Source: Haliotis cracherodii (taxonomy: Eukaryota). From it: a stretch of DNA of 64,000 nt. Positions 5,879 to 29,390 of this stretch are shown one piece after another. The notes below the pieces were generated by a model. It had not been told where the DNA came from, did no database searches, and saw nothing but the letters and a program-made list of their open reading frames with translations. Within the stretch, counting starts at the first letter, position 1; each line of letters opens with the position of its first letter. The DNA lies in NCBI RefSeq assembly GCF_022045235.1, contig NW_027266319.1, forward strand, positions 59,024,001-59,088,000, written 5' to 3'. The translations under genes were made by a program, and so were the position numbers.

Positions 5879-5881
<3 letters not shown>

Positions 5882-5922
<41 letters not shown>

Positions 5923-5963
5923 ATATTTTACATCATAGTTGTGTCCAGACCGTGTTACCCCAA

Positions 5964-6000
<37 letters not shown>

Positions 6001-6050
6001 ATCAGAAATATTTTACATCATAGTTGTGTCCAGACCGTGTTACCCCAATT
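5882..6050 (+). repeat. Tandem duplication containing (CAT)n microsatellites
   Basis: (cat)n-cagaaatattttacatcatagttgtgtccagaccgtgttaccccaatt occurs twice. Confidence 0.9.
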
Positions 6051-7084: not shown

Positions 7085-9170
7085 TTACAGGAACTAAGTG
7101 AAATGAATCAGCACCATGGTGTATAGGCCAATACATTAGGAATTATGCCAAGTGTCTTGACTGAACCTGCTTATCTACATAGCCAATAAGTAAATACATT
7201 TCATCTGCTGTTGTTCACAATTTACAGGATCCCCAAAACTCAATAAAAGTAAAAAATGATTTGTATCCATGTCTCTCATCATGCACCATCAGTAAGCAAG
7301 TAGGATGGGTTAACACAGCTTGAACACGGCTTCAGTAATATCCTGGCATGTCAGCTTCATTATATTTGAACGTGACTGCCATTTAAATATTTCTTAGGAA
7401 TTTAAGCGAGCACGCTGGTAGGGGCAGATCATAGAGGGGGTACCCGGGTGGTAAATTTGGACTCGTCCCATCTCTAGTGTGAACACTCCTGATGGCTGAT
7501 GGCACAAATCTGGACAGGGTGTTGCAACTAACACTTATAGTCCACCAGTCCTTATGATGATAACACATAGCGAAACCCTTTAAACTGGCAAATTTCTACT
7601 AGTCCTTATGATACCTTAACTATTGGGCAGTTTGGCAAGGACTACAGGACTAGTGCCAATTTCTAACATTGCCTTTGACTACTGGGCCTCCAGTGCCTTA
7701 CATCAGCCATCAGTTGAAGGGGGTGGGGGGGCATCCTGGGTTTGATGCTATAGTCATGATAGTATTGAAATAGACAACCCCTAATTCTGAAGTTTTAAGA
7801 TCAAAGATAAGACACAGATCCCAGCATTAGAAATTGACACCAGTCCTGTAGTCCTTGTCAAACTATCCAATAGTTTAGGTATCAAAAGGACAAGTAGAAA
7901 TATGCCATTTTTAAGGGTTTTGCAAAATGATATCATAATAAGGACTAGGGGACAAATAATGTTAGTTTCTACCGCTGCAGACCCCATGACTTTCCACCTT
8001 TGTTTTGAAGACTGTTAATGAATACACTCAAGGGAATGCAGGATCTCCATTCCGTTGATGATTGAGGCATCCAATTGCTGATCATGAAAGCCACAGAAGT
8101 CTTCATAATTGAGCGACCACATAGTCAGAGTATATACATAATGCCTCCTCATCTGAAAGAAGCAAATTGTCTCGTGGCATGATGGCTCCCTTCCAGATAA
8201 CATACTACAACTGTAGAATAAATAGCTATCCAAGCTGCTCAAGATATGTTAGTGTCTGCCAGAGAAACAAAAAGAGCAGCGTTCACTATATGTTATTCAT
8301 GTTAAACACACTGAAATAAAATTTCTTGATCCTACGCATCTCGTAGGAAGATTATTTCTCTGGCTATAAACTACTCCCACTTAAAAGGTGTATGACTTAT
8401 CCAGTTACTTTCCTATTTTTTTCCAAATCTCTACAGCAAACTAGAATATTATCAATACAACCTCTAAATGACGTTCACCTCACAATGAGAATTACCTGTT
8501 ATTCTTAACATTTTGGACTTTTCCCAGAGTTGAAACATTGTTTTTTAGGACTACTTATATTGAATGTAAAACAAAATTATCAACTAAAAATGTCTTGTAA
8601 ACACATGCTTGGTAATACAGTAATATTCCACACTTGTCCATGAAATCCCAAGCAAGATCGTTAAGGGAAATAACATTTGCAAATAACATTTCCAATTATT
8701 CAAGTCTATATTATGCAACGGGACAACAGAATGATGTGATTCAACGTGGAGTCATGGTGTGGGGAGAATTTACAGAGAAGTTCAATGATTTCTGGTCACT
8801 ACAGAGTAAAATTTGTGAAATTGTGTGATGACATTAGCCAAATATGCTGTTTATGCTGTTTATATTTCTTCACAAAAAACAACGCTGAAGCATGTCACAT
8901 TATATCTGACTACATAGTGACAACTAAGAGATAGCACTTCAAAGAATGAACATTTGTACCAGAATCAAGGACATGTATTAGTTTTACTTTTAGCATCTCA
9001 TTAAACACATAGCTTGAACTGGGATGGAATGAAACCAACTACATCAACAAGCCCGAATAGTGATAACATAGACCAATACCCCCAAAATGTTTGAAATTCT
9101 ACCAGCCTTTAGGATATCATTAACGTTAACAAAACTAGTGTAGACTACCAGGCTAGTGGCAATTCCTATC

Positions 9171-9326
9171 CAGTGGTAGAAACTAACAGTTTCAATCCAC
9201 TAGCCCTCATAATGATAACACATTGCAAAACCCTTAAAAATAGCAAATTTCTACTAGTCCTTATGGTACCTTTACTATTGGGCAGTTTGGCCAGGACTAC
9301 AGGACTAGTGCCAATTTCTAACCCTG
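9171..9326. mobile_element. ~156-bp MITE family (TIR cagNgttagaaa), here nested in the end of an older copy
   Basis: cagtggtagaaa / tttctaaccctg, flanked by ctatc repeats. Copies at 7515-7670, 7822-7977, ~9512-9640, 12113-12268; related larger element at ~14151-14473. Confidence 0.8.
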
Positions 9327-10343
9327 CTATCCCTGTCCAAATTGGTTAACACACTATGAGATTGAAATACAGGATGACGTCAGTATGAACTATCCTCCCA
9401 AACAACAGGATATACTATTTCCCAACATCCTGTTTAAAGCTGATGAAATCAACACAATTGGATGGTTCCTTTTTTTCTTGCATGTGATTGGTTCAATTAT
9501 AAACTCAACGTCAGAAATTGGCACTCGTCCTATAGTCCTTCCCAAAACTGCTCAATAGTGGAGATATCATAAAAACTTGTAGAAATCTGCCATTTTTAAG
9601 GGTTTTGCTATATGTTCTCATTATGAGGACTCGTGGCTTTTGACTTGGGCTTGCTCCAGATACCCAGTAAAAAATACACAGATTCCTCAACTGTAAACAG
9701 GATTCAAATTTTACTTCTTCATGAGATTCTTTCGGTACCATTCATTCTAATTAGAATATCCCTGCAACCTGTTTCAAGCTTGTCGTTTTTAACAAATATT
9801 GTCTTAAAGCTCTTTACTAAAAGGTCTTGGTATGTGAATGCGCATGTGTCATACAAACATGTACAGCATATACACAATATATTAGGCAACAAAATAAGCA
9901 GTGATGTAAAAAATATTCCCTCTCCAACAAAATATGTCGACTCCCCTTTCACAATTAGGTAATGGTCAGGCCCTAATAACCCGAGTATATTCATTGTAAT
10001 ACTGAATATAAACACCATATAACACTGAATTCAAGGTATCTAGATCCAATTACTTAATGACTACCCAAAACAGAACGAGATAGCCACACCATAATTATTG
10101 AAACCTACATAATGAGTAAGAAGATCTCAATGACCACCTGTAAACACATGTGGTAAGGGATAAAAGTGTTTAGCACTAAGTACTACCTACTCCCCATGGC
10201 TGGCTAATGAGCACATGGAGCAGTAGACATCTTGCAAGGGAGCTTACTCTAACAACATTACAAGCCCCTATGACTGTACCTCATAACAGTGTTTAACAGG
10301 GGCATGGCTGGGCCAGTCATAACAAAGTTTTAATTCGGTGAAC

Positions 10344-10659
10344 TTGTGGAATACTAAGATGTCTGACAATGGATACAGTGAGTATTTATAATTTTCATCA
10401 AGAAGCTATGGACAGTTTGGTTTAGAAGTTAAATTTGAACCCAAACTAGAGTTAAAGTTAGATGTATTGAAATTGTTAATGTACCTAGACAATCTTGTCA
10501 CTTGTGGAATAATACTATGATGTATGGAAATGGATAAATTGAGTATATTATTTTCATCATGAAACTATGGACAGCTTGGATTAGAAATTAAATTTGAACT
10601 CAAACTAGAGATAAAGTTAGATGAAATGAAATTGTTCATTACCTAGACATTCTTGTCAC
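10344..10659 (+). repeat. ~158-bp diverged tandem duplication
   Basis: ttgtggaata...tacctagaca(a/t)tcttgtcac occurs twice. Confidence 0.85.
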
Positions 10660-11724
10660 CAATGCTTGTATGTCCCTTTTATTGGACTGATAATTTCCTT
10701 TCATGAAAGTGGTGTACTGTATAATTATCATTTAGGAAAAGGAGGGGAATATATATTCATTTACAAACGAAGAAACAGTTTTAGAAATCAATTTAGTTAA
10801 GTTAATAACTGTCACTGTAAGCTATTGAGCATTTGTAAGTAGGTACAATTGATTTCAAACATAATCAAAAACTACATACACTGTAGTACATTATTCTTAA
10901 GGTGCTTTAGTGAAAAGATACTTTTGAGAACCCATGGCATATATATATGATGTTGCTTTTGTCGTGGTGTTGGCCAATATTCAGTCAGAGGTCTACAGCA
11001 AATTCTAGAATAAATTCCCAAATTAAAATAATATTTTCCCAATAAAAACACTCCTCGAATAATGTTTTTATTTTTAAAAGGTGACTTGTAGTTAATTTAT
11101 CAACATCTCTTCAGAGAAATATAAATTTCCAATATTTATTATTTAATTTTACAACACTGTATTAATTGCAATGCAAAATACCTTGAACTAAATTTGAGAA
11201 GATAAGGGGGTTGGGGGTGTCAACAATTTGCCAGGCACTTACATTTATTTGAAATCCAAGCTAAGACTCATTATACAGACATAGAGACATGTATTGATTT
11301 AACTCTAAAGTGTTAATCTGCAAACACACTGCTCTGTGAAACATTCAATAATCTAACAATCAATATCAGTGAATCATGTCTTCAATATATCCTTCGCCTT
11401 GCATCTTAAACCTTGATGAACTGAAACAGTTATCATGTCAAAGACCTTCACCATATTCACAAAACAAGAAAACAGTATTCCTTTCAAGCCATCAATCTTA
11501 CTTGGAAAACTACCTGTATACATGTTTAATGATCCCCTGACAGCAGCATCAATATCACCCTACCTTGACCACACCACAAGTGTTCATGTGCAAATGTTGC
11601 TTAGAAGTCAGTATAAATAATGCATACAAAGTACTGTTTCAGAAGATGTAATGAGGCATAGAATTAATACATGCATAAGCATGACACTTGACTGAACTGT
11701 TGTGTTCAACAATCAGTAACATGT

Positions 11725-11890
11725 GAGTGAGTGAGTATGGTTTTTACCCCGCTTTCAGCAATGTTCCAGCAATATCACGGCGGGGGACACTAGTAATGGG
11801 CTTCACACATTGTACCCATGTCGGGAACCGAATCCGGGTCTTCGACGTGACGAGCGAATGCTTTAACCACTAGGCTACCCGACCGCCCCG
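11725..11890 (-). mobile_element. SINE family A copy
   Basis: Reverse complement of the family consensus; flanked by acatgt direct repeats. Confidence 0.88.
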
Positions 11891-12024
11891 ACATGTATAA
11901 AGACAACTTCAAAAGGGACTTCAGAGAAGGGGCTTATTTACAGGAGATTAAACTTTAAGTTTGGTTTTATGCATGATAGGAGAACCATTCAACTGTCACT
12001 TTCTGTCCCTCAAGCTGATCAGTA

Positions 12025-12343
12025 GTGAGAATTGTTAACGCCGCTTTTAGCAATATTCCAGCAATATCACAGCGAGGGACACCAGAAATGGGCTTCACAC
12101 ATTGTTCACATGCAGGGATAGAAACTAAAATTTGTAGTCCACTTGTCCTTAAAATGATAAAAAGTAGCAAAAGCCCTATAAAGGGCAAATTTCTACTAGT
12201 CATTATGATACCTTAACCATTGGGCAGTTTGACGAGGATTACAGAACTAGTGCCAATTTCTAACACTGCCCATGTGAGGAATCGAACCTGGGTCTGCGGC
12301 ATGACGAGTGAACACTTTAACCACTAGGCTACCCCACTGCCCC
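12025..12343 (-). mobile_element. SINE family A copy interrupted by a MITE (12113-12268)
   Basis: SINE halves at 12025-12112 and 12269-12343 rejoin colinearly. Confidence 0.85.
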
Positions 12344-14959
12344 AGCAGATCCGTAAATAATCAATATAATTAACCATGTCAAGTTGGTTAGCGGCCTGTA
12401 CGGATAGCATGATGTCATTTACTTGTCACATCACAACTGACTATGTCTGCACTGCTGAAAGTCCAGGTGTCACTTTGGGACCATTAAGCTTGTACAGCAG
12501 TGATAGATGTAACTAATATTATTAACAGTAAACATGTCATTTTTCACTGAAATATCTATTTCGTACTTATGCCATGGGGGAAATCAATATTCAATCCCTG
12601 AAATTCCATGATATTTTTGCTCGCAAAAGTTTTCTACTGCTTCTATAATGTACTTTCAGTTATCATTTTAATGCTGATCAAAATGCAACAAGCTTTTCAA
12701 GTTAAGTAACAACGCTGCACAGCCAAAAAACATTTTCAGGGTGCTTCAGTGAACTAGTTATGTCAATATTGTAGTTTCAAACAATGAGTGTCCAAAATGG
12801 ATATCTAGTTTTATGCTATGCCTACTTATTGATGACCTTATATTCACAAAAGCTTATTCAATATTACAAAAAGTATATGAAACTTTATATACATAACCTA
12901 ACTACATGTACCTTGTTTGATATCCAACTTTCATCTACAGTTGTCCGTTGATGTCAACTTGGTAAATAATAACAAACTACCTATTCAGTCCGCTTGCTCC
13001 AGTTAATGGCATCATGGGGAAATGGCATGTCCAGTTCATGTTCAGTAGGCCGACTATCATGAACAAGTTCAAGCCCGAGTGATCGTAACCAAACCAAGTT
13101 GTACTACAGAACACATACAGGAATCTATTTGTGGTTTATCTCCCTTGGACTACAAATAACTTCATTCTTGAAATCCACTGTCTACTGTCATTTAGCAAAG
13201 AGAACTGTTTAATCAACAGATAATAAATATTTAAAAAAAATGTAAGACATAATGCTTGGCAAGCCAGTTATACACTATTTGTGATTATGAATAGTAAATA
13301 AATAAAGTATCAATATGAAATATTTCAATTCATTAAAATCTGCATACAGTTTAGAACTGCTCACAATAGAGTCACATATATATTGTTGCCTACTCAATCT
13401 GTGCCAAAACCTTGTCTGCTAGTGAGTGAGTGAGTTGGATTTAATGCTGCTTTTAACAGTATTATAGTTATATTGCTGCATGTCAGCTTAATGTGGGAGA
13501 AAAGCCCCAAGTGATGCAGGTCTCAGACTTTTACCACTTTGGTGAAACCCATGAGTACGGGTATGGTGCTGACAAACCTAGAAACATAATCGGCGCGAAT
13601 CAGGATTCGAACACACAATCATAGGTTTCTGGCATGCCCAAAGGGATGCGACTCTGCACAGCGAATCGCTGCGCCTGAGACAACTGGCGTGACCCCCTTT
13701 GCCTACATGAAGGTGTCTCCGAATATCACTTTCAGTTGGTCTTATTGTTCACATAAGGACTATATTAGCTGACCATACCAAACCAAACAATGTATTTCTT
13801 GACTAGGGGTTCAGAGTAGCGGCTGAAGTCGCAGATCACCTGACATTTCAGAGTAATTACAAAGAAACCATCAACTCCCTCATAACATAAGAGTGAAATA
13901 CTGTCATCATGACAGTCAGTAATGTTCCAGAATATCATCTCCCTGTTAATAATCAGATCTGAAAAAGGGACACTCCAGTTTTTGTTAGCAAATGCAAGGA
14001 TCCACATTGTCAGGATACCAAGACAATTCTCATTGGGGTTGCTTCTCCAAGGGACCTGTTACTGTTAGTGATTTCTATGAATTCACAAACTACTGTGGAA
14101 ATGGCATCAGTGAGTGCCTAGGTAACATAATTGCATAGTTCTTCTAACACCAGAGTTCGAAATTGACATAAGTCTGCCAGTGTGAGACTAGTGAAATCCA
14201 TGAACACCTAGTGGCATATCCTTGTGGACTACCACTGTTACCATTAGGTACATGGCAACTCAATAGCAGAATATATTTGTAGACTAATGAAAATACAAAT
14301 AATCTTCCCGGTACAGTTTCAAAATATTCAAATATGTAACTTGTCGTTTGTAAGTTTGTGAGATAAGTAGAAGTTCATAATCCAATTGATAGGAAAGGAA
14401 TTTTGAATTACTACTAATCCATCTGAAATACTTACTACTGGCAATGTTGGAAAGACAAAAATTTCAAACATTGATCAACCAGCATATAGCTCGGATGTAC
14501 TGCACAGCAGATCTTCCTGATTTACAGCTAGACTAAACAAGTCCTATTTCCTGTTTATCAATGTTTTGCAACACTTGCTTTTTATCACTATGAAAGTACT
14601 TAGTCCCCTAAACAAATGGCAAAAAAACCAAAAACAGAGCATGTCAGAGCAAAGTAACTGAAATGACCCGAGACATCAATGCAATTGCAAAGGAGCTTCA
14701 AACATACCGAGGTAAATAAAACAATCTGACTGTTTAGCAAGGCAACCTGTACAAACATTATGTGAATACTGCCATATAATCACTATGCCAGAAGCCAGTA
14801 ATCTATGAAGCAGCTGGTGGTATGAACTGATATGGGATCCACTAGTTATATAAACCTGTGATGAAAAACACCAAGCAGGAGGGATATCACATCATCTCTC
14901 TAAGGACTCTATGCAATCATTGAAATGTGTACATTATCTAAATTGCATACTTGTTCAAT

Positions 14960-15110
14960 GCAGGAGTACTGCTGGAGACAAATGGCATCATTCACCTGAT
15001 GAAGGAGTTAGCATATACTCCCAAACGTTGTGTTCCTCATAATAAAGAAGTTGACCTCCATATATTCTCTTCCTTATGTGTATCACTTCTAAATGCCTTT
15101 CAAAGACCTG
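14960..15110 (+). mobile_element. Penelope-like terminal remnant with degenerate hammerhead core
   Basis: cac-CTGATGA-a-GGAGT-loop-ACTCC-cAAAC-GTT-gtg, then aataaagaagttg and acttctaaatgcc..caaagac, motifs shared with 17590-17730 and 60820-60900. Confidence 0.5.
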
Positions 15111-16504
15111 AGGATATTTCTGGATTAGAAGTCAGATGTAAATATGACCCGTGAACTGCTAAGAAACTGAACACGTGGGGACAGAGAACCCTTCAGAAAA
15201 ATAAACAAGGGGTCATTGTCAAAACTTATTGGACCACACTCTGACTCTAAGAGATCATATAGAACAATAGACTGAATTTTCGCAGGCATCTTTCTCAGAT
15301 ATTATAAATTGACGCAACAACATCCTATGTCATATATATTTAGCCTCAACAGTTTGTGATCATTGCTGTTTGCTTGTCTCTCCAAGGTACTTGTATTAAA
15401 AATTACAATGTAGCTTTGTCACTGAATTATATTTCACATGATTTATACAAAGCTGACATGTTGTAGTATTTCTTTCTGAGTTATCTTGCAACCATCTGTA
15501 GTCATAAAACCAGGTATGCTAAAAATTTCGACTTTTCCAGCTTTTCTACCTTTACGCTGTCTCTCAACATGGTCACTCTCAGGTGGGCCATGCAACACAT
15601 TCTGTGTATCGCTAACATAACTTGTGGTCTGTGATTCTACGATACCTGGGTCATTTGAAGCAGAAACATCTTTGGCATTATCAGTACTGTGACTACTATA
15701 TTTGCAAAACTGTGTAAACTTGATTCTGATTGGACTATTTTTTACTATCAGCTAAGGTGCTGATAGTAAATTGAGACCCATAAGGCAACACAAATCTCAA
15801 GATTCACATTCTATAATAGAAGCAGCGAAGTGATGTAAACTGTTTTATGACAGTAAGTGACTTCCATAATTATATGAAATAAACAGATCCACATGAATGC
15901 GCCCCTTGTCCCACTGAGAGTAAATCGATAAGATATTGTGAAAATCCTGTTAGGCTGCTGCCTCAGCAGAACACTTAATGTCTGTGATTATTGCTATGGA
16001 TAACAATTTCTTAATTATACAATATATTAAAGAAGCTGTTATTAATAATAATACTCATTGTCGTGACTTTCAACTGTTAAGTGTTTCTTATCAATCTGAC
16101 AGAAGCTTAAATTGGACACCAGTCTGAGAGAATAACAATCACATCATTAGAGTGAACATTATATTAATTGCAATTGTAAACTTCCTATGAGTGCTGCATC
16201 AATCTCAGGCAACTGATAGCAGACATCACAACTAGGTTATGGATAAACAGTTAAAATGACTCATAACTTTAACCTGTTCCCGAGAGTGTATGTGTATCAC
16301 ATAGCAATCATTGTGTCCTGACACAAATCATAACACTTGCTAACTCTATCACAATACAGGTACCTTTAACAGCTGACAGTTCTCACAACTGGCTTCTTTT
16401 TCCTATAACAGTGATAGATGTTCCACTTCAACAGAAGTTTGAAGCTATTAGTCTGGATAGCAAGCACAATGATAAAAGTTATGGAGGAATTAAGACAGAT
16501 CTAG

Positions 16505-17010
16505 CAGAGCTCCAGATAAGCTGCGTATCTGCGTAAAATACGCATCAGAAATGCAAAAATATGCAGTAAAATATAATCCAAGCGTATCAAATACACAACG
16601 AACATTACAGATACGCTACAAAAATAAAACTTGTGCGTATCATCAAAATATTGTGAAGTAACTCTGCGTATTCGATTAGCAAATGAGCAACTTATTTTGA
16701 AATTATAAGCTGGCATTCCGTCAACCTTGCCAAACTCCACGATGACAGTCAGATCATGATCATTTGCCATCACACTTTCTTGTGGAAGTATCGTGGTATT
16801 TTTGAGTCCTATAAAGCTCTCGAACCCACACGACACCAGTTTGCAGGGACTAGATAAATAGTGTTTTTAAATATTTAACTTAAATACCCACATGTGTAAA
16901 AACTAGTAGGTAACAGAAATTTGAATACGCAGATAGAATTACTGATACCCAATGATTTTAAAATGCATGGGTAAAATACCCACAACACCAAAAGCTTATC
17001 TGGACCTCTG
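16505..17010. mobile_element. MITE with 16-bp TIR and 7-bp TSD
   Basis: cagagctccagataag / cttatctggacctctg; TSD gatctag on both sides (16498-16504 / 17011-17017); subterminal tgcgtat repeats; partial copy at ~49355-49487. Confidence 0.85.
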
Positions 17011-18895
17011 GATCTAGCTTATCAATTTTATAAGTTAATTGAGGACCCTATAATTATCAACCTTTTGTGATCTTATATGAAGTTCCATTCGTATCTCACA
17101 GTTGATAAATTATTTCATATACCTGTCAAATGGAACTGATCAAAAGCATGGGCATTTACCAAAAGTCAGGATGTGTTGCTAACTCTTGATATTGCCCCAT
17201 GAAAGAATCTTACTGTCTTAGCCCTTTGACTAGTTTGAGCAGCCCTTACTATTCTAAGGATCTGTTTTATCTGTATGGATGGGATGTGTAAATTTTTTTT
17301 TTAAACTTGCCCAAAACTTTGCCAAACCTGTCTTTCAGTATCTAGCTTAGTTGATACAAGTATTAAAATTATAGATATAGAATATTATGGGCTGAGTGGT
17401 TAAACATGTATGGATTCCATATAAATAAGCTGATATTTTATGTATATCTTATAGTTTTATGGCAAACTAATATTGATCAATCATAGAATTATCCCTGAAA
17501 AGTACAGGGTAAAACTAGAAAACTAGAATTTCGATGTAGAAGTCAAAGATGAAAACATTTAAAAGATCTCAAGATAAAAATCCCAGACTTGGCCGCAAGC
17601 ATGATCCGATTCACCTATTGAAGGGGCAAGAAGTAGTCTGAAACGTCATTACAAGAATAAAGAAGTTGTTATTCATCAAAATGTGTCATGTATCCATGTT
17701 CTTCCCACTTCTAAATGCAAATCAAAGACATGATCAAAGTATTTACAGAAGATTTTACTCTTAAATATAAAGGAAACAACAAAATGTTTAACAGCCTTAA
17801 GGAAAAATACAACTATCTTTGACAAACACTATATGTTATGAGATTGCTCTATGAAAAGTGACACCATATCAAACTTAAAGCAAATATTTACTTCCTTCTC
17901 TTCATTTAGCAATTTTAACTATGGCATGGGATGTCACATCCAGTAATTCAAACTAGACTAAGTTAACCTGTATAGTGAAATAGAGAAATAACTAGTTACT
18001 TTCTCAAGTGTCTCTTTTTCAAACCGAGTACTAAATAACTACTAATCATGCCAACATAAATTAATTGTTAAGAGACATAGATACCTCAAAATGAAGCCTC
18101 CTCTCTTTGAGATGTTTAACTTTTTATCTGCAGACGCATAATCTATCATTATTTAATGCACATTTATTATGAGTGTTGTGTATCACATTGCACGGGGGCC
18201 TATCCTGCATGCAGTCATATTTCCAAAACATTTGTGGGCTGAAATCACAAAATGTCCAGTTGATTAATTAATATTTGCAACATCGTATTTTCTCACTTTA
18301 CAATATTATTTTCTCACTCCAAATAAAGAAACCACAATCAACATGGAATTATCTGACACATATTTTCAACTTTCAAAGTCATATTCTGTCATACTATTAT
18401 CAAAACTTTGTAAAGGTTGCACTCTCTTTTAATTAAGTGAAATAAGTATGTTGAAATTGATTAGTATAATGATGATTTTCTTCATTTGTAAATTATATTC
18501 CTAGAAACTCTCAGAGTTTTGTGTCATCAATTAAAAGCAACCATGCTACTGACACAGTTTCAGTTTTCATACATCCCTAGTCGCTATTACCCAATATTAC
18601 TTCAGCCATGATGAAACCATCTGAAAATGACATCATTGGGAACTACTTTTACATCAACATATATTTATTTGGAACCGTTTTGCTTTACGACGCAAATGCC
18701 AAGGTCAGGGATGAAATGAAATGGCCATGGCCTTATTTTGTTCTGATAGCGGTGTAGGAGTAAGGCGGGAGTTTGCATTTCGCCTTTGGCAGACGACGCG
18801 AATTAGTTGTAAACAACGAACGATTCCAGACAGAAAACGGAATCGGCGAAATGCATTATTAAAAACCCATTGATATCACTGACAAGTATACATAC

Positions 18896-19015
18896 CCATT
18901 CATTACTCTTAGAACTAAACGAATATAACGCAACTTGCGACGCAGTGTCTGCTATTTCAGTAATATATGGATCTCGCTGCTGCAGAGTCGCTAGGTTCAT
19001 TCGACTTTCCGCCAT
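18896..19015 (-). CDS. DCP1: DCP1 coding exon 1 (mRNA-decapping enzyme subunit 1, start of EVH1 domain)
   Basis: 120 nt encode MAESRMNLATLQQRDPYITEIADTASQVALYSFSSKSNEW, matching the DCP1A/B N-terminus (L..L...DPYI..I.D....VALY.F.....W). Start context aaacATGG; phase-0 donor TGG|GTATGT at 18895. Confidence 0.95.
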
Positions 19016-19496
19016 GTTTTCAGTCTCAGTACAGGTGCGCGCTGAAAACAGTTCCGGGCTGAAGGCGAAGGCCGTTTTTTGCATGCCACATAAACATTAT
19101 TTTATTTGCAGAAATAAAATCGATTGTCAGATGTAATATAATTCCTTAAATTATAGAAACTCAAATCTATATTTATTGACCCATTTATAGTTCTATTTTA
19201 TTTTTACGATAAAATATTCTACATAAATATTTTTGCAAGAATTTCAATTTTAATTGACAACATATGCAAAAATTCTGTATTTTTGCCGATATTTCCGTAC
19301 ACACCTCATATTTTGGATGGATTTTATGGTGTATATTGGCCGGGGTTTTGAAAAAGTCTGAAAACCAAAGAATGGTACCGATCAGAAAGCCCCGGATGAA
19401 AATGCGATATTTGTAGGTTTACCAGAAAAATGGAGGAAACCAAGAGATAGGGCCAAATATTTTGTTTGGAACGACAGATTCCCGTGGTTCCTCACA

Positions 19497-19515
19497 ATGG
19501 CCTCTGCGGCATCAG
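19497..19515 (+). CDS. CACNA1D: Probable first coding exon of the Cav1 gene (MASAAS-G)
   Basis: acaATGG Kozak context, ATG GCC TCT GCG GCA TCA G|gtactt. The phase-1 donor joins the phase-1 acceptor at 29391 (G+GG = Gly) in frame. Lies in the CpG-rich promoter zone. No transcript evidence available. Confidence 0.6.
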
Positions 19516-21041
19516 GTACTTATTTTCTCTTTAATAATATTTGCTTTATTCTATCGTATATTGTGTTATCTTTTATAAATTAGAAGCGGAAATGTTTCGG
19601 TTGCTGATGAAGATTCTGACGAAAAACATGGCAGCGTAGAATTTTCTCCATGTTCCTCACGAATTTCTTTGGGGGTAGTGGATTCATGCATTCATACCCG
19701 ACCACCACTCGTGCATGCTAAAACGTATTTATTTGCAACATATAGCGTCTCTGTTGCATTGATTACGAGAGCCGCAGGATGGCGACTGTGACAGCGAACG
19801 ACACAAGGACATTTTGTCATAATTCGTGTTTCCAGGCAGACATAACCAAAATCACACAGTCGGTGGCAATCTCGGTGTTTTCACAAGATGCATATACTCG
19901 TCTATATTTTAATGTAATTAAAGGTTAGGGTAACCTACTTTGGGTAAACGTAGCCGTATATTCTTATAGATCGATAGTACAACAATTATTCATTGTTTTA
20001 TAAGACATAACGAAAATCACTTAGATTGTGTTTTCACTCGAATTATGTATAAGTCTTAGTGAAAAAAAGTTTTTGCACAACACAAAGTGAATGTTGCATC
20101 TACATAACGTATCCTGCTTCATCCTCTATATTATCAATGATGTCTAGATTAGTTTACTGGTGGATTTTTGTTGTTTTTATTTCAATTTCTTGTAATTTTT
20201 TGCATTATTGTTACCATTTTTGGAAAACATTACAGACAAATAAAAGTTGAACACTTTTTCATTTGTCAACATGGTCAAAATGAAGTTTATTAACATGATT
20301 AAGAAAATTAAATCAATCTGATTTTACTTTTCTGCATGTTATGGAGGTGATAGTAACACATCTCAATTTGTTACCATTAAATAGAGCTATTATACTCATG
20401 TGTGCAACAATGTAGGTCTTGTTTTAGCTTATGGTGAAATTTGTTGTCAGCTTCTTTTGACACAGTGTCTCACTTTGTGCACCATATATGGAGAGATCAT
20501 TGTTTAAGATAAGATAATAACCATATTCTAAATGAATACAAGGTTCTTGGAGTTACTATGTCATGATATTTTCTGGAAACTTAAATGAAGCTTTGAAGCT
20601 AAATATATGGAAATATGTATAATTATGTTAATATTTAATTATGAAAAATAATAGTAAGACTTCATATATTCTAGCTTGATATGTTGTATCACATGTCATA
20701 TCCAACATGCCCAGATAAAACCAGCATCAAACCGTAGGTGGAAATTCTAACAGGATACATTTTTGTGATATTCTGATGATATTAGAAATCTAATCTGCAT
20801 GTGACAAAGAGGACATATGAAACAAGAAATAGTACAGATATAGCTTACAGAAGACAACTTACTAGTTTTTCAAAGGGAAGGCCTAGGACCCCAGGCTTAT
20901 GTCAAAAGTTGTTCAAGAGGTATCTGGTAGACAAATGGCAGGTTAGAATTTTTTACCTGATATTTTATTTCGAAGTGTTTAGTTTCACTTTTGATTAGAC
21001 TATACAGATGATGTGGCATGGCTATGATATATATGTACATA

Positions 21042-21594
21042 ATGTAGGACTCAGATCTGGCGGAGTCTCAGGTCTAGGTGGATTCAGCCCAGCAGAAAAA
21101 GAAAACAGAAATTGAAAGCCACTAAAGCCCCTTCCTTTTCAAATGATATTTTAGAAATCCAAGAAGTTCCTCATTTTAAGGGTTTGAATCCTGGAAGCTT
21201 GAAAATATTCATGATTTTATCAACTCCAGCAAATGAGTAGAAAAAAATATTTCTATTATGAGGCTTAGGGGAACGTGTTTTAAGAAAAGTACCGATTTGC
21301 GATCCCTGCACCGAAGATGCTGTTTCAAAGGTGTAACGACAAAAAATAATACAGAGATGTCACAATAATGATCATCAAAAGCCTGCCGCTATATATGAAT
21401 CTATATGACGTTTAACGCTATAGAAATTGACATTTATAAATATTATATGTTAATCTGCCATAGATCTAAGTATCTAAGTATAATATCTGCCCCATATGTT
21501 TAATCTACCATAGATCGGAGTATGCGCCGATATTTGCCCTATTTGTGGAATCTGCCATAGATCTGAGAATCCACCACGGGTCAGGGTCCTACAT
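21042..21594. mobile_element. MITE with ~45-bp imperfect TIRs
   Basis: atgtaggactcagatctggcggagtctcaggtcta / tagatctgagaatccaccacgggtcagggtcctacat; internal repeats aatctgccatagatc near the right end. Confidence 0.65.
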
Positions 21595-21726
21595 ATGTGA
21601 AACATAAAACTTGCAGATTCCTTGCAAAATTGTCAGTTATTTTGAGTGTGACCCACACTGATTAGCATTGCATCAACAGCTCAAATTAAGTATCAGGAAA
21701 CATGTCATATCATGACTAAGGTATTG

Positions 21727-21977
21727 TGTTCGTTTGTTTGTTTGTTGTTTAACGCCACACTCAGCAATATTCCAGCTATATGACAGCGGTCTGTGAATAA
21801 TCAAGTCTGGACCAGAAAATCTAGTGATTGACATCATGAGCATTGATCCATACATTTGGGATACGATGACATGCATCAACCAAGTCAGCGAGCTTGACCT
21901 CCTGATCCCGTTAGTCGCCTCTTACGACAAGCACGGTCGCCTTTTACAGCATGTGTGGGTTGCTGAAGACCTATTCT
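21727..21977 (-). mobile_element. SINE family B copy
   Basis: Colinear with the family; degenerate TSD ctaaggtattg / ctaaagtactg. Confidence 0.85.
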
Positions 21978-22042
21978 ACCCCAGATCTTCTTGGGTCCTA
22001 AAGTACTGATACATGAGGTCGGCACTGGTCAGTTCTGGGTTA

Positions 22043-22206
22043 AGGGGGCAGTGGGGTAGCCTAGTGGTTAAAGCGTTAGCTCGTCACGCCGAAGACCCGG
22101 GTTCGATTCCCGACATGGGTACAATGTGTGAAGCCCATTTCTGGTGTCCCCCGCCGTGATATTGCTGGAATATTGCTAAAAGCGGCGTAAAACCATACTC
22201 ACTCAC
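22043..22206 (+). mobile_element. tRNA-derived SINE family A (~165 bp, (ACTC)n tail), inserted in the head of a family B copy
   Basis: A box tagcctagtgg, B box ggttcgattcc; 14-bp TSD tcagttctgggtta (22029-22042 / 22207-22220). Confidence 0.92.
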
Positions 22207-22451
22207 TCAGTTCTGGGTTAGAGTTGGTCTTCATAACCCATAATCAAGGTTTCGCAACCTACATTTGTCGTAAGAGGTGACTAACAGGATCAGGTTTGCG
22301 GACTTGGTTGATGAAAGTCATTGTATCCCAATTGCTTAATTTGATGTTTATGATGTCAATCACTGGATTGTCTGGTTACAAACAACTGTCCTATAGCTGG
22401 AATATTGCTGTGTGATTGATAAACAAGAACAAACAAATATGAGGTCGATGT

Positions 22452-22872
22452 TAGGGCTGGGATGGGTAACTCGGGTACTCGGGTCGGGTGGTTCCTGAGT
22501 AGGACCTGGGTACCCACAGGACTGCCCGGACCCGTGGATAGTCATGTGATATATTGTTTAATGGCGAAAAATTATCTAGAACTTCCACGGTTAAACGATA
22601 AGTGACTTATGTTCGCATTTCTTTCTGACTATGCATGCATTCCTTCTGACTTCATATGTTTGAATAGAGGTAAAACTTCAGTCAACTTCAGTGTATGCAT
22701 GACCAGATCGTTTCATACGAGTATCTAAATACCTATTGCCACGGCTAGGGTCAAACTATTCCCAACCTGACATTTGTACCTATTTCCTGAGACCAACAGT
22801 CGGTACCTTGGTAGGGTCGGGTAATAGTTGGGTTGGTACCTGGGTGATAAATTTGGACTCGTCCCAGCCCTA
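22452..22872. mobile_element. Non-autonomous hAT-type MITE
   Basis: TIR tagggctggga / tcccagcccta; 8-bp TSD gtcgatgt / gtcgttgt; subterminal gggta/taccc repeats. Confidence 0.85.
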
Positions 22873-24834
22873 GTCGTTGTACAGGGACAATCCTGGACTG
22901 TTATCAATATATTAACTGCATATCATTGAGAATTACACATTTTTAGCTAAAATGATTTGATATATGAGAGAGCCCAGAATTAATAAGCTTCAGCAATGAG
23001 TTGACCACCAGCTGGTATGTGCAACAGTACATTCCTAACACATTTGTCAGCGGTTGAAAGCACTGACCTGATTTTTGAAGTTGAGCCTTTAATGACTGAA
23101 CATGTGAAGCACTGTGTTGTGACAGAACCTACGAAATATTGTGATCAGCAGAACCGTTCTGGGTCAGACTAAATGGAGCTGGACCGAAAAAAGTGACATA
23201 CTGATCATTATCATGTTGGAACAATGTGTGTCTCACTCAATGATTGTTACAGACGTGAGTGAGTACTGTTTAGAGACCCTGTTGGCAGTATGCCAGCAAT
23301 ATCATGTGGAGCTAAGAATGTGGTCATATTGTATCCATGGATAGAATCAAACCCAGATCTTCGGTGTGGTGAGCAAATGCATTAATTACTACCACCCCAC
23401 CATCTTTCTCAGCAGAAGTACAAACTCCGACCACAAGTCCGTATATGTATTGTAGAAATCTTTGCTATCCCACTAGTCCTGTCGAAACTATTTGGTTGAG
23501 GCTGTGAGACTAGTGCCAGTTTAAACAATGTTAAACAGCTGTCACAATACAAGGGTACTATTATACCCCGGCTTGTTCTTGCGTTGTTTAGGAAAAAACT
23601 ATTTTTGTTAACTATTTGTACGTGTGACAGAGGCCTTTTAATATTATTGTTGCCATTTGATGATCTAGTGCATTTCAAGTTTTACTTGCATGTTATTAAT
23701 ATGACCACCATGACCACAGTTACATCATCTTGTTACTAACTACGTTAAAGTTTTTTTAATATAAGGTTAGACATGATGACGGGGTGTTTTTTTCCTCCGA
23801 ATGTAAAAAGGATAAATAAAGTAGTGCCAAGCTTTGATATGACCTTTGAACTTTGACCATGATGACCATTCTCTTGAATTCTCAAAAAATCCATTTCTTT
23901 ACACTGTAACCATGGTAACAATCATCCCCTCACCATCCCCTGGACCACTGAAGTTGAAACTACAAAGGTTTGCTCCCACCAATGATGACACCAACATTTG
24001 TCCAAGAGATTCAATTCTAAGTTTCCTATGGCCTTCATGACAGCCATGTTGAAAATCCCATATATGGCTATAACTCAGCCATTTTCCTCAAACTGTGATG
24101 AAATTTGGTATATTTGTGGTTGGAAGTAAGACTCAACACATAAGCTCCGTTTATCTCAATGTCGTTCATTTTGACCTTGATTTGACCTATACATTTTGAG
24201 CATGCTCTTGAAGTCTCCAAGTACATTATCTTTCTGTAAACATCATTGCCTTAGAATCCACTGGAGCAATGAAGCTGAAACTTCACATGCTTCATCTGAC
24301 CAATGATGACTCCTGAATTTGTTAAATAAAACAAAATTAGTGTTAGTTTTTAGACCTAAATATTTGAATATTTGAATATCAGTGCTGACAGCAACTTTAA
24401 AGTGTCCATCTTTGTTGATATTTTAAACTGCGGTCTACATATCCAGGTGAGCTACAATGCTGTGACACTATTTGTTTGACTTTAAACTCCAGGTGAGCAC
24501 TAATTTATCATGGCCAAAGATTTATATGAGTGCATTACTGGTGTATATAGTTCATCATTATCTTATCTTGCAGTAAGATACCGGTACTCGCTTCTGATTG
24601 GTTAATGAATGGGGACAAATGAGGTACAAATTTCAAAATCCTAGCTAACGAACTTCAAATCAATTCGAATACAATGATATGATTGTTATCTCAAAACTGA
24701 AAACCTGTCAAATTTCACAAACTTAACCCGTAATGCAAGGGCATTAACTCTGAATGCGATTAAATCTGCTACCTGTCAAAAATAGGTGAAATAGATTGGT
24801 AGTCGTGCATTTTTGATACATGTACTACCAACTG

Positions 24835-25080
24835 AAGATACCTGTGAAAATCCTGGTTAGAATTGGTCTGCAGGAACCCTTGATTGTCATAAGAGGTGAC
24901 TTACGGGATATGGTTCTTAGGCTCGGTAACTTGGTTGATGCACATCTTCATGTTCTAATTGCAAAAATCGATGCTCATGATGTCATTCACTGGATTGTCT
25001 GGTCCAGACTTAAATATTTACAGACCGTCATCATATAGCTGGAATATTGCTGAGTGCAGCGTTACACAACAAACAAACAC
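24835..25080 (+). mobile_element. SINE family B copy (diverged)
   Basis: gtgaaaatcctggttagaattggtc...ggaatattgctgagtgcagcgttacacaacaaac. Other partial or diverged copies at ~1-34, 22215-22435, 25448-25560, 32618-32755, 35150-35310, 35950-36165, 39355-39580, 42520-42735. Confidence 0.8.
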
Positions 25081-26432
25081 ACAAACCAAATCAAGGTACA
25101 TCGCCTCTCACACAGAGTACTTCAAGCTATCCCCCTCAAGACCAGTCGACAACGTGTAATGTGCTTGGTATTCCTAGTAGTGTTCTACTCATATGCCTGA
25201 CTGATATGTTTGCCGATAACATATGTAAATACAGCTTGTATTTTCATTCCTTTATATCTGACACCTGACATCATGGGATATGTTGTAACATGTTGCAAAT
25301 TAGATTGTTTTAATTACATCATCATTGAATGTTTGTTTGTCATTAGGAAATGTGTATTTCATTAGTATCCATGTACATCATGGTGGCCAGTGTTTATACA
25401 TGTGTGGAGTACTTCTGGTTTATCTGACAAAGTTCAACTAATTCAGATGTTTATTTGTCGTTTAACACCACTCTCAGCAATATTCCAGCTGTATGATGGC
25501 GGTCTGTATATAATTAAGTTTGGCCCCAGACAATCCAGTGATTGACATCATGAGCATCAATTTACAAAACACACCATCGAATAACCAATTCTTGTTTGTT
25601 TCCATTTTTACCACCATCAAACATACTTTTTATTGCCCGACAGTTGATATTAAAAATCCCCTCTTGCTCACTTGGATGTTGTGTCACATACTATATTATA
25701 TTATGACAATCTAATTTGTGGCAATTTCCTAGCAACTCTTTGTTCATTGTTTATCATAGAGGATATTTTTGAATATTATGAGACATGATCTTTATCATCG
25801 TTTCCTTCTTTGTTCTGGCTCATAATCTGAAGTACATCTTTCATCCCGCATTTGACAAGATAGCCTAGCTAACGTGGCTAAATGGTTAAGTGGAAACTAA
25901 TTTTGGACACAAGATCTCTGTGTTGTCAAAGTAAGGAACACTTGTAGGAACAGGGCTCTAGACACAACAAATATAATAGAAGCTGAAATTGCTCATTTTT
26001 CTTCAGAGGGAATTTGAAATTTTAGGCCTTTGATTTCATGAGTCAGAATGCATGAAATTTGAGGAAAGTTTGTGTTTATTGAGGCCTTTTACCCTTTACT
26101 GTTAACATTGTTTCACTTGGTTAACAGATTTAATGAAATTTGGTATATGGGTGGCTGGTAGTGAGACTCAACACATTTCGCTCCGTAAATGTAGGTTGAG
26201 TGAAATTTGTTAGCTCATAAATGGAACAGTTGTTGTTGAATAAAAAAAAAAATACTAGACCAGTTTTACAATTATAAAAGCCAAAAGTTCCGGCCCCATT
26301 GTACAGTGGTAACAATTATTACGAATATTCCTTTTCATACCATTTATGGGTATTTAAGAGAGGCTAGTGTTTGGGCGCTGTTGGTTTTTGAGAGAAATAT
26401 TTGAATCACTCTTTCTCATTAAATCTGGAGCT

Positions 26433-26969
26433 GTGGTTAATAGCACAACTAACAATCCATGTTACCATGGTCTGGCAGTGGTTAATAGCACAACTAACAA
26501 TCCATGTTACCATGGTCTGGCAGTGGTTATAGCACAACTTACAATCCATGTTACCATGGTCTGGCAGTGGTTATAGCACAGCTAACAATCCATGTTACCA
26601 TGGTCTGGCAGTGGTTAATAGCACAGCTAACAATCCATGTTACCATGGTCTGGCAGTGATTATAGCACAGCTAACAATCCATGTTACCATGGTCTGGCAG
26701 TGATTATAGCACAGCTAACAATCCATGTTAGCATGGTCTGGCAGTGGTTATAGCACAACTAACAATCCATGTTACCATGGTCTGGCAGTGGTTATAGCAC
26801 AACTAACAATCCATGTTACCATGGTCTGGTAGTGGTTATAGCACAACTAACAATCCATGTTACCATGGTCTGGCAGTGGTTAATAGCACAGCTAACAATC
26901 CATGTTACCATGATCTGGCAGTGGTTATAGCACAGCTAACAATCCATGTTACCATGGTCTGGCAGTGGG
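26433..26969 (+). repeat. 44-45-bp minisatellite x12
   Basis: gtggtt(a)atagcacaactaacaatccatgttaccatggtctggca; a diverged monomer lies at ~27485-27530. Confidence 0.95.
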
Positions 26970-28417
26970 TGAATATTGCTTAACTCCGCATCTCTCAACG
27001 TGTAAGGGATGGTGAAAAAAGAACATGCAGCACATTTACTTGGTCCTTTGTTATGGCAAATTCATGGGTATCAAGTTGGGCAAATTGCTTCAGTTTCAAC
27101 AGAACAAATTCACAAGAGACAAGGAGCCTTAGTTTTTAGTCTTTCATGGTGCAAGCCATTTATGTGTGATAAACAACATGCAGTGCTGTATGTTAATGAG
27201 ATTCCTGTATACTATGTCATTGATACCTGTATTTCGATGTCTTCATCTCCATGTAATATAAACCATGTACATATATATAAAGCAATTATGGCCTCAAATG
27301 TGTTATTGAATATCTACCAAGCTAGGCTGTGGTGATAAATATGAAATATGACAAGTTTAAGGTTCATAACGGCATGCTTATTGAGTGTGGAAGGAACGAC
27401 AAGTGAATGTTGTTTGTGCTACTGTTTGCTATGCTACAGTTTCTAAAGCCTGTCTGTATGTTATGAAACTTGGAGCAGGGAAACCAGTGGTTTAATATTA
27501 TTAATAACAATCCATGTTACCTCGGTCTGTGAGTGAGTGGGTGAGTTAATATTGCTTCAATTTGTATCAGATATTGCAGCTATTTGCAGCAACTGTCTGT
27601 CAGCAAGTGTTAAACATCTTTGACATAGGCTTTGTGGATAGAGATGATGACTCGGATGATATTTCTGAAATACTGCTCGCAGTGGCAGTACACACAACAC
27701 ACAACACACCCGTAGTATTCAGATAGCTTGTAACACATACTTCGTCTCGCTGTTGATGTTGAGACAATCTGTCATAATCTGTATCTCTTGAAATTAAAAT
27801 AGTTCGGGGGTCCTGTATACGTGTCGTCGATGAACCCCTTAAACTTTTAACTTTTGCCGTTAGGATCAGGACTCAGACCCCTTGTCACACTTATGGTAAC
27901 TTCGAACGCTTTTAAACCATACATAGCAGTAATTACACGTTCTTACATAGACAAGGCCCAAAAACACAAACAATTAACATGATTATCAGATAAGACATTT
28001 AAAGAAATAACAAACAAAAAAAGATCTTTGGTTAACTCAGTTACCATGGTAACGCGCTGTATGTTATTGTCTTAAAATGTAGAGCACGTCCTGCTAGGCA
28101 GGTGTTTTCCTGGAGAGTGCCAAAACTATTTTTTTCGTCTAATTTCTAATGACTAGTTAGTGGAGACTAAGTATAGGAACTAAGGACATTTTAAGGCAGG
28201 GTTATCTGGTGGATGTGATGGCAAGGCAGATCAGTCTGTCTGTAAACATGGTGCCGCCATATCACGGGCCACAGACAGGTGTATGGATGTTTACTGGAGC
28301 CATCATCCTTGTTTATGTTTACCAGTAGACGTCAGAGTGAAGGGAGTACTGAAACACATTGCATCACCCTATTAATTTACTTGGAAACTTTACTTAGTCT
28401 TAGTCACAATTTCATTT

Positions 28418-28699
28418 GGGGGCACGGGTGGCCCAGTCGTCTAAGGCGGCTTGATTCGCTGTGCAGAGTTGCGTCCCTTGGACACGCCAGAAACCTATGA
28501 TTGTGGGTTCGAATCCCGGTTCGCCCCGATTATGTTTCTAGGTTTGTCAGCACCATACCCGTGCTCGTGGGTTTCACCGAAGTGGTAAACGTCTGAGACC
28601 TGCATCACTTCGGGCTTTCCTCCCACATTAAGCTGACACGCCGTGATATAACTGGAATACTGTTAAAAGCGGCGTAAAACCCAACTCACTCACTCACAC
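28418..28699 (+). mobile_element. tRNA-derived SINE family C (~280 bp, long A-B box spacing)
   Basis: A box tggcccagtcgtctaagg, B box ggttcgaatcc, tail shared with family A; 14-bp TSD tcacaatttcattt (28404-28417 / 28700-28713). Other copies at 13420-13700 (-), 36770-36895 (-), 37690-37870 (-), 62583-62790 (-). Confidence 0.9.
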
Positions 28700-29390
28700 T
28701 CACAATTTCATTTATTTGGTGTATCATAATGACATGTATGTAATGTATATAGCTCAATGTCACTACAGTCTGAAATTCTTCGTCTTTATTGTAAATGTGT
28801 TAAGAATTATTGATTGCATCATGGAACATGATGTAATGCTAACGTATATTTTTTAGCAGCATGAGCATATTGAATTGATATTTAATTATCTCCCAAAGTG
28901 GTTTGGTTTCATTTGAAGTGTTCATAATATGTAGGAATCAAACATTCTATATTATGAATACATCTGTTTTCTGATGTATCAGAGGGCAAATGTGGGTCTG
29001 TGGTCTGAGGCCCCTAAGCAAAGCAGAGTTGCTTCCCTTGGTTGTGCCAGGAATCACTTTTTGTGGCAAAATCATTGATTTTTGAACCATGGTCTATCAG
29101 CAGTGTACCCATGATCACAGGTTTAACAAACTGTAATCATCTACCATCTGCGTCACAGCAGTCTTTCCTCCAACATTGAGCCATGATTTAACTGAATCAC
29201 TGTTCAGAGCGTTTAACCAAACCTCTTCTTTCATATGATTATGTAATTTTGAACATTCGAGGAAATGGTTAGTTATTGCAACAGAGTCTTGGAGATGGCA
29301 GGTATGATGGTGCTGTTGCTAAAGCATTCAGCTTACTGTCATGTCATGTTGAAATCATTTCACATCTAATCCCTATGTTTCTGTTTCCAG

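What the first reader, a model, noticed from the sequence alone, without database searches (positions are those of the whole stretch)
18896..19515. DCP1 and the L-type Ca2+ channel are head-to-head within ~480 bp, matching the vertebrate DCP1A-CACNA1D and DCP1B-CACNA1C pairs
Seen: DCP1 ATG at 19015 (-) and a phase-compatible Cav1 ATG at 19497 (+), in one CpG-rich, transposon-free zone of an otherwise repeat-saturated region. Established: in human, DCP1A neighbours CACNA1D and DCP1B neighbours CACNA1C, both divergently oriented. Inference: this is a pre-protostome/deuterostome microsyntenic pair kept by a shared bidirectional promoter. It couples a housekeeping mRNA-decay factor to an excitability gene, and here appears in a very compact form. 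The adjacency holds even if the exact first exon is wrong, because the Cav1 exon at 29391 is secure.
Basis: partly seen in the sequence, partly recalled or inferred. Interest (0 to 1): 0.8.

Follow-up and report, generated by a model that had tools for sequence, protein, structure and literature searches.

The report
DCP1 and Cav1 share divergent promoter
In this mollusc genome the mRNA-decapping gene DCP1 and the L-type calcium-channel gene start back to back, at most about 250 bases apart, and RNA data confirm both first exons; the linkage of the two genes across animals is already published, so this is a well-documented compact example and not a new principle.

Summary
DCP1 exon 1 (minus strand, ATG 19015, coding 18896-19015) and a Cav1 first exon (plus strand, ATG 19497, donor after 19515) are both real.

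- **RNA evidence:** in transcript contigs of 4 runs from 3 studies, 19515 is spliced to the Cav1 exon at 29391, and DCP1 exon 1 is spliced to a 41-nt exon at 2925-2885.
- **Spacing:** the outermost transcript ends (19022 and 19269) leave at most 246 untranscribed bases.
- **Setting:** 18.5-20 kb is single-copy with undepleted CpG (o/e 1.05-1.25 against 0.50 for the window), between interspersed repeats.
- **Conservation in molluscs:** the MAS...G mini-exon recurs in other mollusc Cav1 models. Two related metagenome contigs carry a phase-1 ATG mini-exon 490-494 nt from the DCP1 ATG, although neutral sequence is saturated.

- The deep DCP1-Cav1 linkage is already published (Robert et al. 2022, cluster 953, "Wnt5-7 block", planulozoan).
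- That a shared promoter preserves the pair is inference. In mouse, Dcp1b and Cacna1c have separate promoter peaks.

Verdict: a compact new example of a known kind, of moderate interest.

The parts
2885..2925 (-). DCP1 exon 2 (41 nt, EKTSIEGSLFVYK plus 2 nt); acceptor ...tttctag|G, donor AG|gtaagg
   Evidence: The loose-end letters of the DCP1 contigs in 4 runs match 2895-2924 exactly. Sequence read.
2926..18895 (-). DCP1 intron 1 (15,970 nt). It holds interspersed repeats, for example a young ~507-bp element at 16505-17011.
   Evidence: Splice shown; repeat copies.
18896..19022 (-). DCP1 exon 1. The coding part is 18896-19015 (40 codons, N-terminus of the EVH1 domain). The leader is only about 6-7 nt, with the start context AAAC|ATGGCGGA.
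   Evidence: Translation. PF06058 match at 39.2 bits. RNA contigs of three runs end at 19021/19022. Start context.
19023..19268 (.). Untranscribed gap between the two divergent transcripts (at most 246 nt, AT-rich). This is the candidate shared or bidirectional core promoter.
   Evidence: No contig lies on 19074-19207 in any of the 4 runs. The outermost contig ends are 19022 (-) and 19269 (+).
19269..19515 (+). Cav1 exon 1. The leader (at least 228 nt) has six upstream ATGs, all closed before the start codon. Start codon at 19497, coding MASAAS plus 1 nt (phase 1).
   Evidence: Contigs of 4 runs cover it and continue into exon 2. uORFs. MAS...G is conserved in P0004, P0008, P0009 and P0018.
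19516..29390 (+). Cav1 intron 1 (9,875 nt, GT-AG), with interspersed repeats at about 21.7-22.9 kb.
   Evidence: Junction 19515^29391; repeats.
29391..29769 (+). Cav1 exon 2 (379 nt). It holds the conserved N-terminal region ...[56 protein letters not shown] and ends at an AT-AC (U12-type) donor, ATATCCTTT, at 29770.
   Evidence: The 3' end of the intron, with GCCTTAAC and a terminal AC, lies outside the window at coordinate 79029.
18501..20000 (.). Single-copy zone where CpG is not depleted (island-like, presumably unmethylated), spanning both first exons.
   Evidence: CpG o/e 1.05-1.25 against 0.50 for the window. One genomic match only.

Best explanation
Positions 18896-19515 hold the true 5' ends of two single-copy genes transcribed away from each other. 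DCP1, a decapping-complex subunit, runs leftwards. The L-type calcium-channel alpha-1 gene (Cav1) runs rightwards.

Shown: both first exons and their splices; at most 246 untranscribed bases between them; a unique, CpG-undepleted setting. By the usual structural definition (divergent genes with starts less than 1 kb apart) this is a bidirectional promoter region.

Inferred: the two core promoters are physically interleaved, so any breakpoint between the genes would damage at least one of them. That would lock in, for this mollusc lineage, an adjacency inherited from the ancient, already published animal linkage of DCP1 with Cav1. Whether the two genes are co-regulated is not shown.
For: - Spliced RNA contigs in 4 runs from 3 studies join 19515 to 29391 and 18896 to 2925.
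- Contig ends at 19021/19022 and at 19269-19358 bound the gap.
- Gene identity: DCP1 Pfam match; L-type-only PDB matches and named mollusc L-type hits.
- Both genes are single-copy.
- CpG o/e is 1.05-1.25 against 0.50. The same island-like profile occurs in related contig L003.
- Three pairs of protein fragments show the same exon boundary. The spliced or annotated forms read MASSPTG|AHNE (P0004), MASQGPG|GNNE (P0009) and MASPGPG|RNNE (P0018). The matching unspliced ORFs P0003, P0007 and P0019 read on into intron sequence instead.
- Related contigs L003 and L004 carry a phase-1 ATG mini-exon with a G|GTA donor 490 and 494 nt from the DCP1 ATG (482 here). The background expectation is 0.0066 per 31-nt window.
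- Their intergenic identity to the window is at the shuffled level (52-53%). Spacing was therefore kept while sequence was not.
- Other members of the published block lie on the same chromosome, but 10-37 Mb away. Only this pair stayed adjacent.
- Published linkage: PMC8851819.
Against: - Contigs cannot define transcription starts, so the true starts may lie further out or the transcripts may even overlap.
- Only four runs were laid, and only 17600-21599 was covered. Other Cav1 promoters, for example further into intron 1, are not excluded.
- Co-expression or shared factor use was not tested. DCP1 is expected to be broadly expressed and Cav1 tissue-specific, which fits two adjacent promoters as well as one shared promoter.
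- In mouse the Dcp1b and Cacna1c starts are separate peaks, so promoter sharing is not needed for the pair to persist.
- The L003 and L004 mini-exons are not linked to Cav1 by RNA.
- Three more distant contigs (L005-L007) show no such mini-exon within 0.5-2.5 kb.
Confidence: 0.65

Rival explanations
1. Regulatory-block (bystander) constraint. The pair is kept together because enhancers of the tissue-specific Cav1 gene lie inside the long DCP1 introns (16 kb and about 94 kb here). A break between the genes would separate Cav1 from its enhancers. On this reading the short promoter distance in this genome is incidental.
For: - DCP1 has very long introns right next to the Cav1 start. Intron 1 is 15,970 nt. 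Exon 3 is at C56:58932893, about 94 kb away.
- In mammals the pair persists with separate, distant promoters, as this model expects.
- Irimia et al. 2012 give it as one of the two main causes of conserved pairs.
- Robert et al. 2022 describe the Wnt5-7 block as low-density and probably not co-expressed.
Against: No conserved non-coding block was found between the window and the related contigs L003, L004 and L008 apart from DCP1 exon 1. Only about 6 kb of related intron was available, and from species whose neutral DNA is already saturated. Cav1 is also not a typical developmental-regulator target gene.
Confidence: 0.2
2. Historical linkage without function. The adjacency is a leftover of ancestral gene order that no rearrangement has yet broken. 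The compact spacing only reflects loss of intergenic DNA.
For: All block members are still on one chromosome, so much of the linkage is plain chromosome-scale conservation. No functional link between decapping and L-type channels is known to me (own knowledge).
Against: - The other block members have been scattered over 10-37 Mb, while this pair stayed within 250 nt.
- The pair and its divergent orientation recur in mouse and human for two paralogous pairs.
- The ATG-to-ATG spacing (482/490/494) was kept in relatives whose intergenic sequence is at shuffled-level identity.
Confidence: 0.1
3. By-product promoter. The exon at 19269-19515 arises from upstream antisense transcription of the DCP1 CpG-island promoter that happens to splice into Cav1 exon 2. 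The main Cav1 promoter lies elsewhere.
For: Divergent transcription from island-type promoters is common (established knowledge). An in-frame ATG at 29375, directly upstream of the exon-2 acceptor, could serve transcripts that start in intron 1 (read by hand).
Against: - All four runs show the 19515^29391 junction.
- The ATG mini-exon is conserved as MAS...G in gastropod gene models and in other mollusc transcripts. That marks it as the canonical start codon exon.
- The ORFs starting near the exon-2 acceptor (P0007, P0010, P0019) read through intron sequence and look like unspliced or genomic calls.
Confidence: 0.05

Closest known systems
Wnt5-7 microsyntenic block, cluster 953 (Robert et al. 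2022, BMC Genomics 23:143, PMC8851819)
   Same: It contains cacna1d and dcp1a/dcp1b as linked families across planulozoans.
   Different: That work scores blocks with up to five intervening genes. In the text held it does not describe immediate adjacency, orientation or promoter distance. In this genome the rest of the block (wnt pair, ERC, ninjurins) is 10-37 Mb away on the same chromosome.
Mammalian Dcp1b-Cacna1c and DCP1A-CACNA1D neighbour pairs
   Same: - Same two gene families, neighbouring and divergently transcribed (mouse Dcp1b is on the reverse strand beside Cacna1c).
- Human order ...LRTM2, DCP1B, CACNA1C.
[quoted passage not shown]
   Different: In mouse there are three separate H3K4me peaks, two for Cacna1c and one for Dcp1b. 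The Cacna1c first exons lie more than 80 kb apart. Here the two transcripts are at most 246 nt apart.
Conserved ancestral microsyntenic pairs with bidirectional promoters, e.g. HSPD1-HSPE1 (Irimia et al. 2012, PMC3514665)
   Same: 5'-5' orientation, conserved orientation and a very short intergenic distance (less than 1 kb), which that paper treats as the signature of a bidirectional promoter.
   Different: HSPD1 and HSPE1 are functionally linked and strongly co-expressed. DCP1 and Cav1 have no known functional link, and co-expression is untested. DCP1 and CACNA1 are not named in that paper's main text, and its supplement is not held.

Membership tests
Bidirectional promoter / divergent gene pair | Two genes on opposite strands in 5'-5' orientation with no gene between them | tested here: met
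   DCP1 exon 1 lies on the minus strand and Cav1 exon 1 on the plus strand. No contig lies between 19074 and 19207.
Bidirectional promoter / divergent gene pair | Transcription starts less than 1 kb apart | tested here: met
   Transcript contigs reach 19022 (-) and 19269 (+), so the starts are at most 246 nt apart or overlap. Exact starts need CAGE or 5'RACE.
Bidirectional promoter / divergent gene pair | One DNA fragment drives both directions, or the two genes are co-regulated | not testable with these tools
   This needs a dual reporter assay or tissue-resolved expression data. All 4 runs held both transcripts, but contigs give no expression levels.
DCP1 (Pfam PF06058, EVH1-type decapping subunit) | Match to the family model above its curated cut-off, continued across spliced exons | tested here: met
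   Exon 1 scores 39.2 bits and exon 3 scores 46.1 bits, against a cut-off of 22.5. RNA joins exon 1 to exon 2, EKTSIEGSLFVYK. These are the only matches in the genome.
Cav1 (L-type) calcium-channel alpha-1 | N-terminal region specific to the L-type subfamily | tested here: met
   Exon 2 matches only Cav1.3, Cav1.2 and Cav1.1 chains in the PDB. It also matches mollusc proteins named L-type alpha-1D-like or type D.
Cav1 (L-type) calcium-channel alpha-1 | Four-domain channel body following the N-terminus | tested here: inconclusive
   Only the domain I exons were located, outside the window at C56:59102971-59103543. The rest of the gene was not mapped, and the exons were not joined.
Wnt5-7 microsyntenic block (cluster 953) | [quoted passage not shown] | tested here: not met
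   Only DCP1 and Cav1 are adjacent. On the 70.4-Mb contig C56, with the window at 59.02-59.09 Mb, the wnt pair is at 69.64-69.84 Mb, ERC/Cast at 27.07-27.13 Mb and ninjurins at 22.5 and 31.5 Mb. The cacna2d model found nothing, and no control genome rang either.
Genomic regulatory block (bystander model) | Conserved non-coding elements of the target gene inside the neighbour's introns | tested here: inconclusive
   blastn of L003-L008 against the window finds only DCP1 exon 1. The related intron sequence available was short.

The most novel reading that the evidence does not exclude
The divergent promoter of about 250 nt is the ancestral state of the DCP1-Cav1 pair. On this reading promoter interleaving, not distant enhancers, explains why this pair alone stayed adjacent since before the cnidarian-bilaterian split. 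Vertebrates would have pulled the two starts apart secondarily. That would imply an old transcriptional coupling between a decapping factor and the L-type channel.
Probability: 0.15. Interest if true: 0.55.

Novelty: new member of a known kind. Interest (0 to 1): 0.35.

Why it matters
This gives an exact, RNA-supported anatomy of both gene starts in a mollusc. It includes the true Cav1 start codon exon, which is too small to find by homology.

It also shows that one pair of the published Wnt5-7 block stayed within 250 nt while the rest of the block scattered along the chromosome. That makes the pair a convenient test case for two explanations of conserved gene neighbours: a shared promoter, or enhancers in the neighbouring gene.

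The human counterparts (CACNA1C/DCP1B and CACNA1D/DCP1A) carry psychiatric risk variants near these promoters. A compact invertebrate version could help to dissect what the intergenic DNA does. It does not reveal a new mechanism.

Tried and rejected
- **The look-up of encoding contigs was closed.** The planned look at the neighbours of the Littorina, Aplysia and Pinctada Cav1 models, and any survey of other phyla, could not be done. No other tool here gives eukaryotic genome context.
- **Strict MAS-type pattern (ATGGCNTC...GGT).** It is unique in the window (19497) but absent from all six metagenome loci. A looser, pre-stated pattern (ATG, 3n+1 nt, G|GTA) then found the L003 and L004 mini-exons.
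- **Exon numbering.** The second PF06058 match (L001) was first taken for DCP1 exon 2. It is exon 3. Exon 2 lies in the window at 2885-2925.
- **Alternative start at the in-frame ATG 29375.** Considered, and rejected as the main start, because all four runs splice at 29391.
- **Conserved non-coding elements.** blastn against the related contigs found only the DCP1 exon.
- **Bacterial-type promoter/terminator scan.** It does not apply to an animal promoter and was ignored.
- **VGCC_alpha2 (PF08473).** It found nothing in the genome or in the controls, so it is uninformative.
- **Irimia 2012 supplement.** Not held.

Full report
**What is there**

The window is G000:C56:59024001-59088000 of a 1.18-Gb, 80-contig assembly. 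The best named relatives of its Cav1 exon are molluscs: Pinctada, Littorina and Aplysia.

On the minus strand, 19015-18896 translates to MAESRMNLATLQQRDPYITEIADTASQVALYSFSSKSNEW, followed by a GT donor. This matches Pfam DCP1 positions 2-49 above the cut-off. The only other DCP1 match in the genome is a later exon of the same gene at C56:58932764-58932910.

On the plus strand, ATG 19497 opens a 19-nt coding stretch (MASAAS plus one base) ending at a GT donor after 19515. The exon at 29391-29769 encodes the conserved L-type N-terminus. In the PDB it matches only Cav1.3, Cav1.2 and Cav1.1 chains. In the protein database it matches mollusc proteins named L-type alpha-1D-like.

**RNA evidence**

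Fourteen transcriptome-like Logan contig sets hold part of 18800-19620. I laid four of them (X1, X2, X5, X7; three studies) on 17600-21599.

- In all four, contigs cover from 19269, 19293, 19340, 19358 or 19441 up to 19516. They then run on with GTCAAACAATGACCGGGGCCCTGATAAAAG, which is the sequence from 29392. One G is shared by the donor and the acceptor side, so the junction is 19515^29391.
- In all four, contigs also cover 18895 to 19006-19022 and run on with 30 letters found exactly at 2895-2924. This defines a 41-nt DCP1 exon 2 at 2925-2885 with good splice sites.
- No contig lies on 19074-19207.

The runs are only guessed to be RNA. The contigs skip introns of 9.9 and 16 kb, and the genome holds no second copy of either locus. 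They therefore derive from spliced RNA.

Read by hand, the frame runs ATG GCC TCT GCG GCA TCA G|GG TCA AAC... with an in-frame stop upstream at 19413.

**Distances and setting**

- ATG to ATG is 482 nt.
- The outermost transcript ends leave at most 246 nt (19023-19268).
- Three runs end their DCP1 contigs at 19021/19022. This suggests a leader of only 6-7 nt, but contigs cannot prove a start.
- CpG o/e is 1.05-1.25 across 18501-20000 against 0.50 for the window, at ordinary GC content.
- That 1.5 kb is single-copy.
- Both flanks contain abundant interspersed repeats.

**Is the mini-exon the canonical Cav1 start?**

Yes, most likely. The Littorina and Aplysia models begin MASSPTG, and two spliced Logan transcripts begin MASQGPG and MASPGPG. 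Unspliced ORFs from close relatives diverge exactly at that G.

**Relatives**

- Identity of the intergenic region and the intron to the window is at the level of shuffled sequence, so neutral DNA is saturated.
- L003 and L004 nevertheless carry an ATG mini-exon in phase 1 with a G|GTA donor, 490 and 494 nt from the DCP1 ATG. The expectation is 0.0066 per 31-nt window. The criteria were loosened after a strict pattern failed.
- Both loci share a CCCGGATG about 100 nt upstream of that ATG.
- Both share the DCP1 start context AAA[CG]ATGGCGGA.
- L003 has the same CpG profile.
- Three more distant loci (L005-L007) show nothing comparable within the 0.5-2.5 kb available. This is not evidence of absence.

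**Comparison with what is known**

Robert et al. 2022 already list cacna1d and dcp1a/dcp1b in microsyntenic cluster 953, the 'Wnt5-7 block', which they class as a planulozoan novelty. The deep linkage is therefore known. The orientation and the promoter distance are not discussed in the text held.

In this genome the other block members sit on the same 70.4-Mb contig but far away:

| Member | Position on C56 |
|---|---|
| window (DCP1-Cav1) | 59.02-59.09 Mb |
| wnt pair | 69.64-69.84 Mb |
| ERC/Cast | 27.07-27.13 Mb |
| ninjurins | 22.5 and 31.5 Mb |

Only DCP1-Cav1 stayed adjacent.

- **Human:** the gene order ...LRTM2, DCP1B, CACNA1C is documented.
- **Mouse:** Dcp1b is on the reverse strand beside Cacna1c, with three separate H3K4me peaks and Cacna1c first exons more than 80 kb apart.
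- **Irimia et al. 2012:** they give two standard explanations for such pairs, co-regulation through a bidirectional promoter or a regulatory block.

**Mechanism**

Shown: a divergent pair with starts less than 250 nt apart in one CpG-undepleted, unique zone. This is a bidirectional promoter region by structure.

Inferred: interleaved promoters make the pair hard to separate in this lineage. Because the mammalian pairs persist with distant, separate promoters, promoter sharing cannot be the general cause. Enhancers of Cav1 inside the long DCP1 introns are the main rival. I found no conserved non-coding blocks, but the test was weak.

**Limits**

- Only one read-laying run was allowed, so other Cav1 promoters beyond 21.6 kb are untested.

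**Verdict**

The shared-promoter explanation is plausible for molluscs but unproven. This is a new, compact member of a known kind.

Noticed in passing
window 29770 (donor); 3' end at L009:313-330 (= window coordinate about 79012-79029, outside the window): Cav1 intron 2 is an AT-AC, U12-type intron of about 49.3 kb. Its donor is AG|ATATCCTTT, it has a branch-like GCCTTAAC 9 nt before the terminal AC, and exon 3 then reads AFEYLILITIFANC. Read-through ORFs of other molluscs end ...EW[KR]YPF or YPL, which shows the same donor. Minor-class introns in voltage-gated channel genes are known (own knowledge).
   Followed up: partly
window 19005-19022 (-); L003:2092-2106; L004:791-805: The DCP1 start context AAAC|ATGGCGGA resembles the TISU/YY1-type element of genes with very short leaders (own knowledge). 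RNA contigs of three runs stop 6-7 nt upstream of the ATG. AAA[CG]ATGGCGGA is kept in two related contigs.
   Followed up: partly
window 19317-19450 (+): The Cav1 leader holds six upstream ATGs that form short uORFs, all closed before the start codon at 19497. One of them sits in a CCCGGATG motif about 100 nt upstream of the ATG. That motif is shared with L003 and L004. It may be a conserved uORF start or an ETS-like site.
   Followed up: partly
window 1257-2839: A CpG-rich 31-bp minisatellite (51 copies, 80% matches, CpG o/e 1.3-1.6) lies in DCP1 intron 2, ending 46 nt from the donor of the 41-nt exon 2.
   Followed up: partly
window 16505-17011 and 21724-22880: Two interspersed repeat families flank the zone. 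One is a ~507-bp element with copies 96-98% identical (3,517 first-look candidates), so it is probably recently active. The other is a ~420-bp element at 84-91% identity (12,693 candidates).
   Followed up: partly
G000:C56, 22.5-69.8 Mb: Members of the published Wnt5-7 block (a wnt pair, ERC/Cast, several ninjurins) are all on the window's chromosome but 10-37 Mb from it. The chromosome-scale linkage is kept while the micro-scale block is dissolved.
   Followed up: partly
L003:4129-4178 and L008:2369-2418: A 50-nt stretch is 82% identical between two related metagenome contigs, about 2 kb into DCP1 intron 1. The rest of the intron is at background identity. It is a possible conserved non-coding element, and it has no counterpart in the window.
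   Followed up: no
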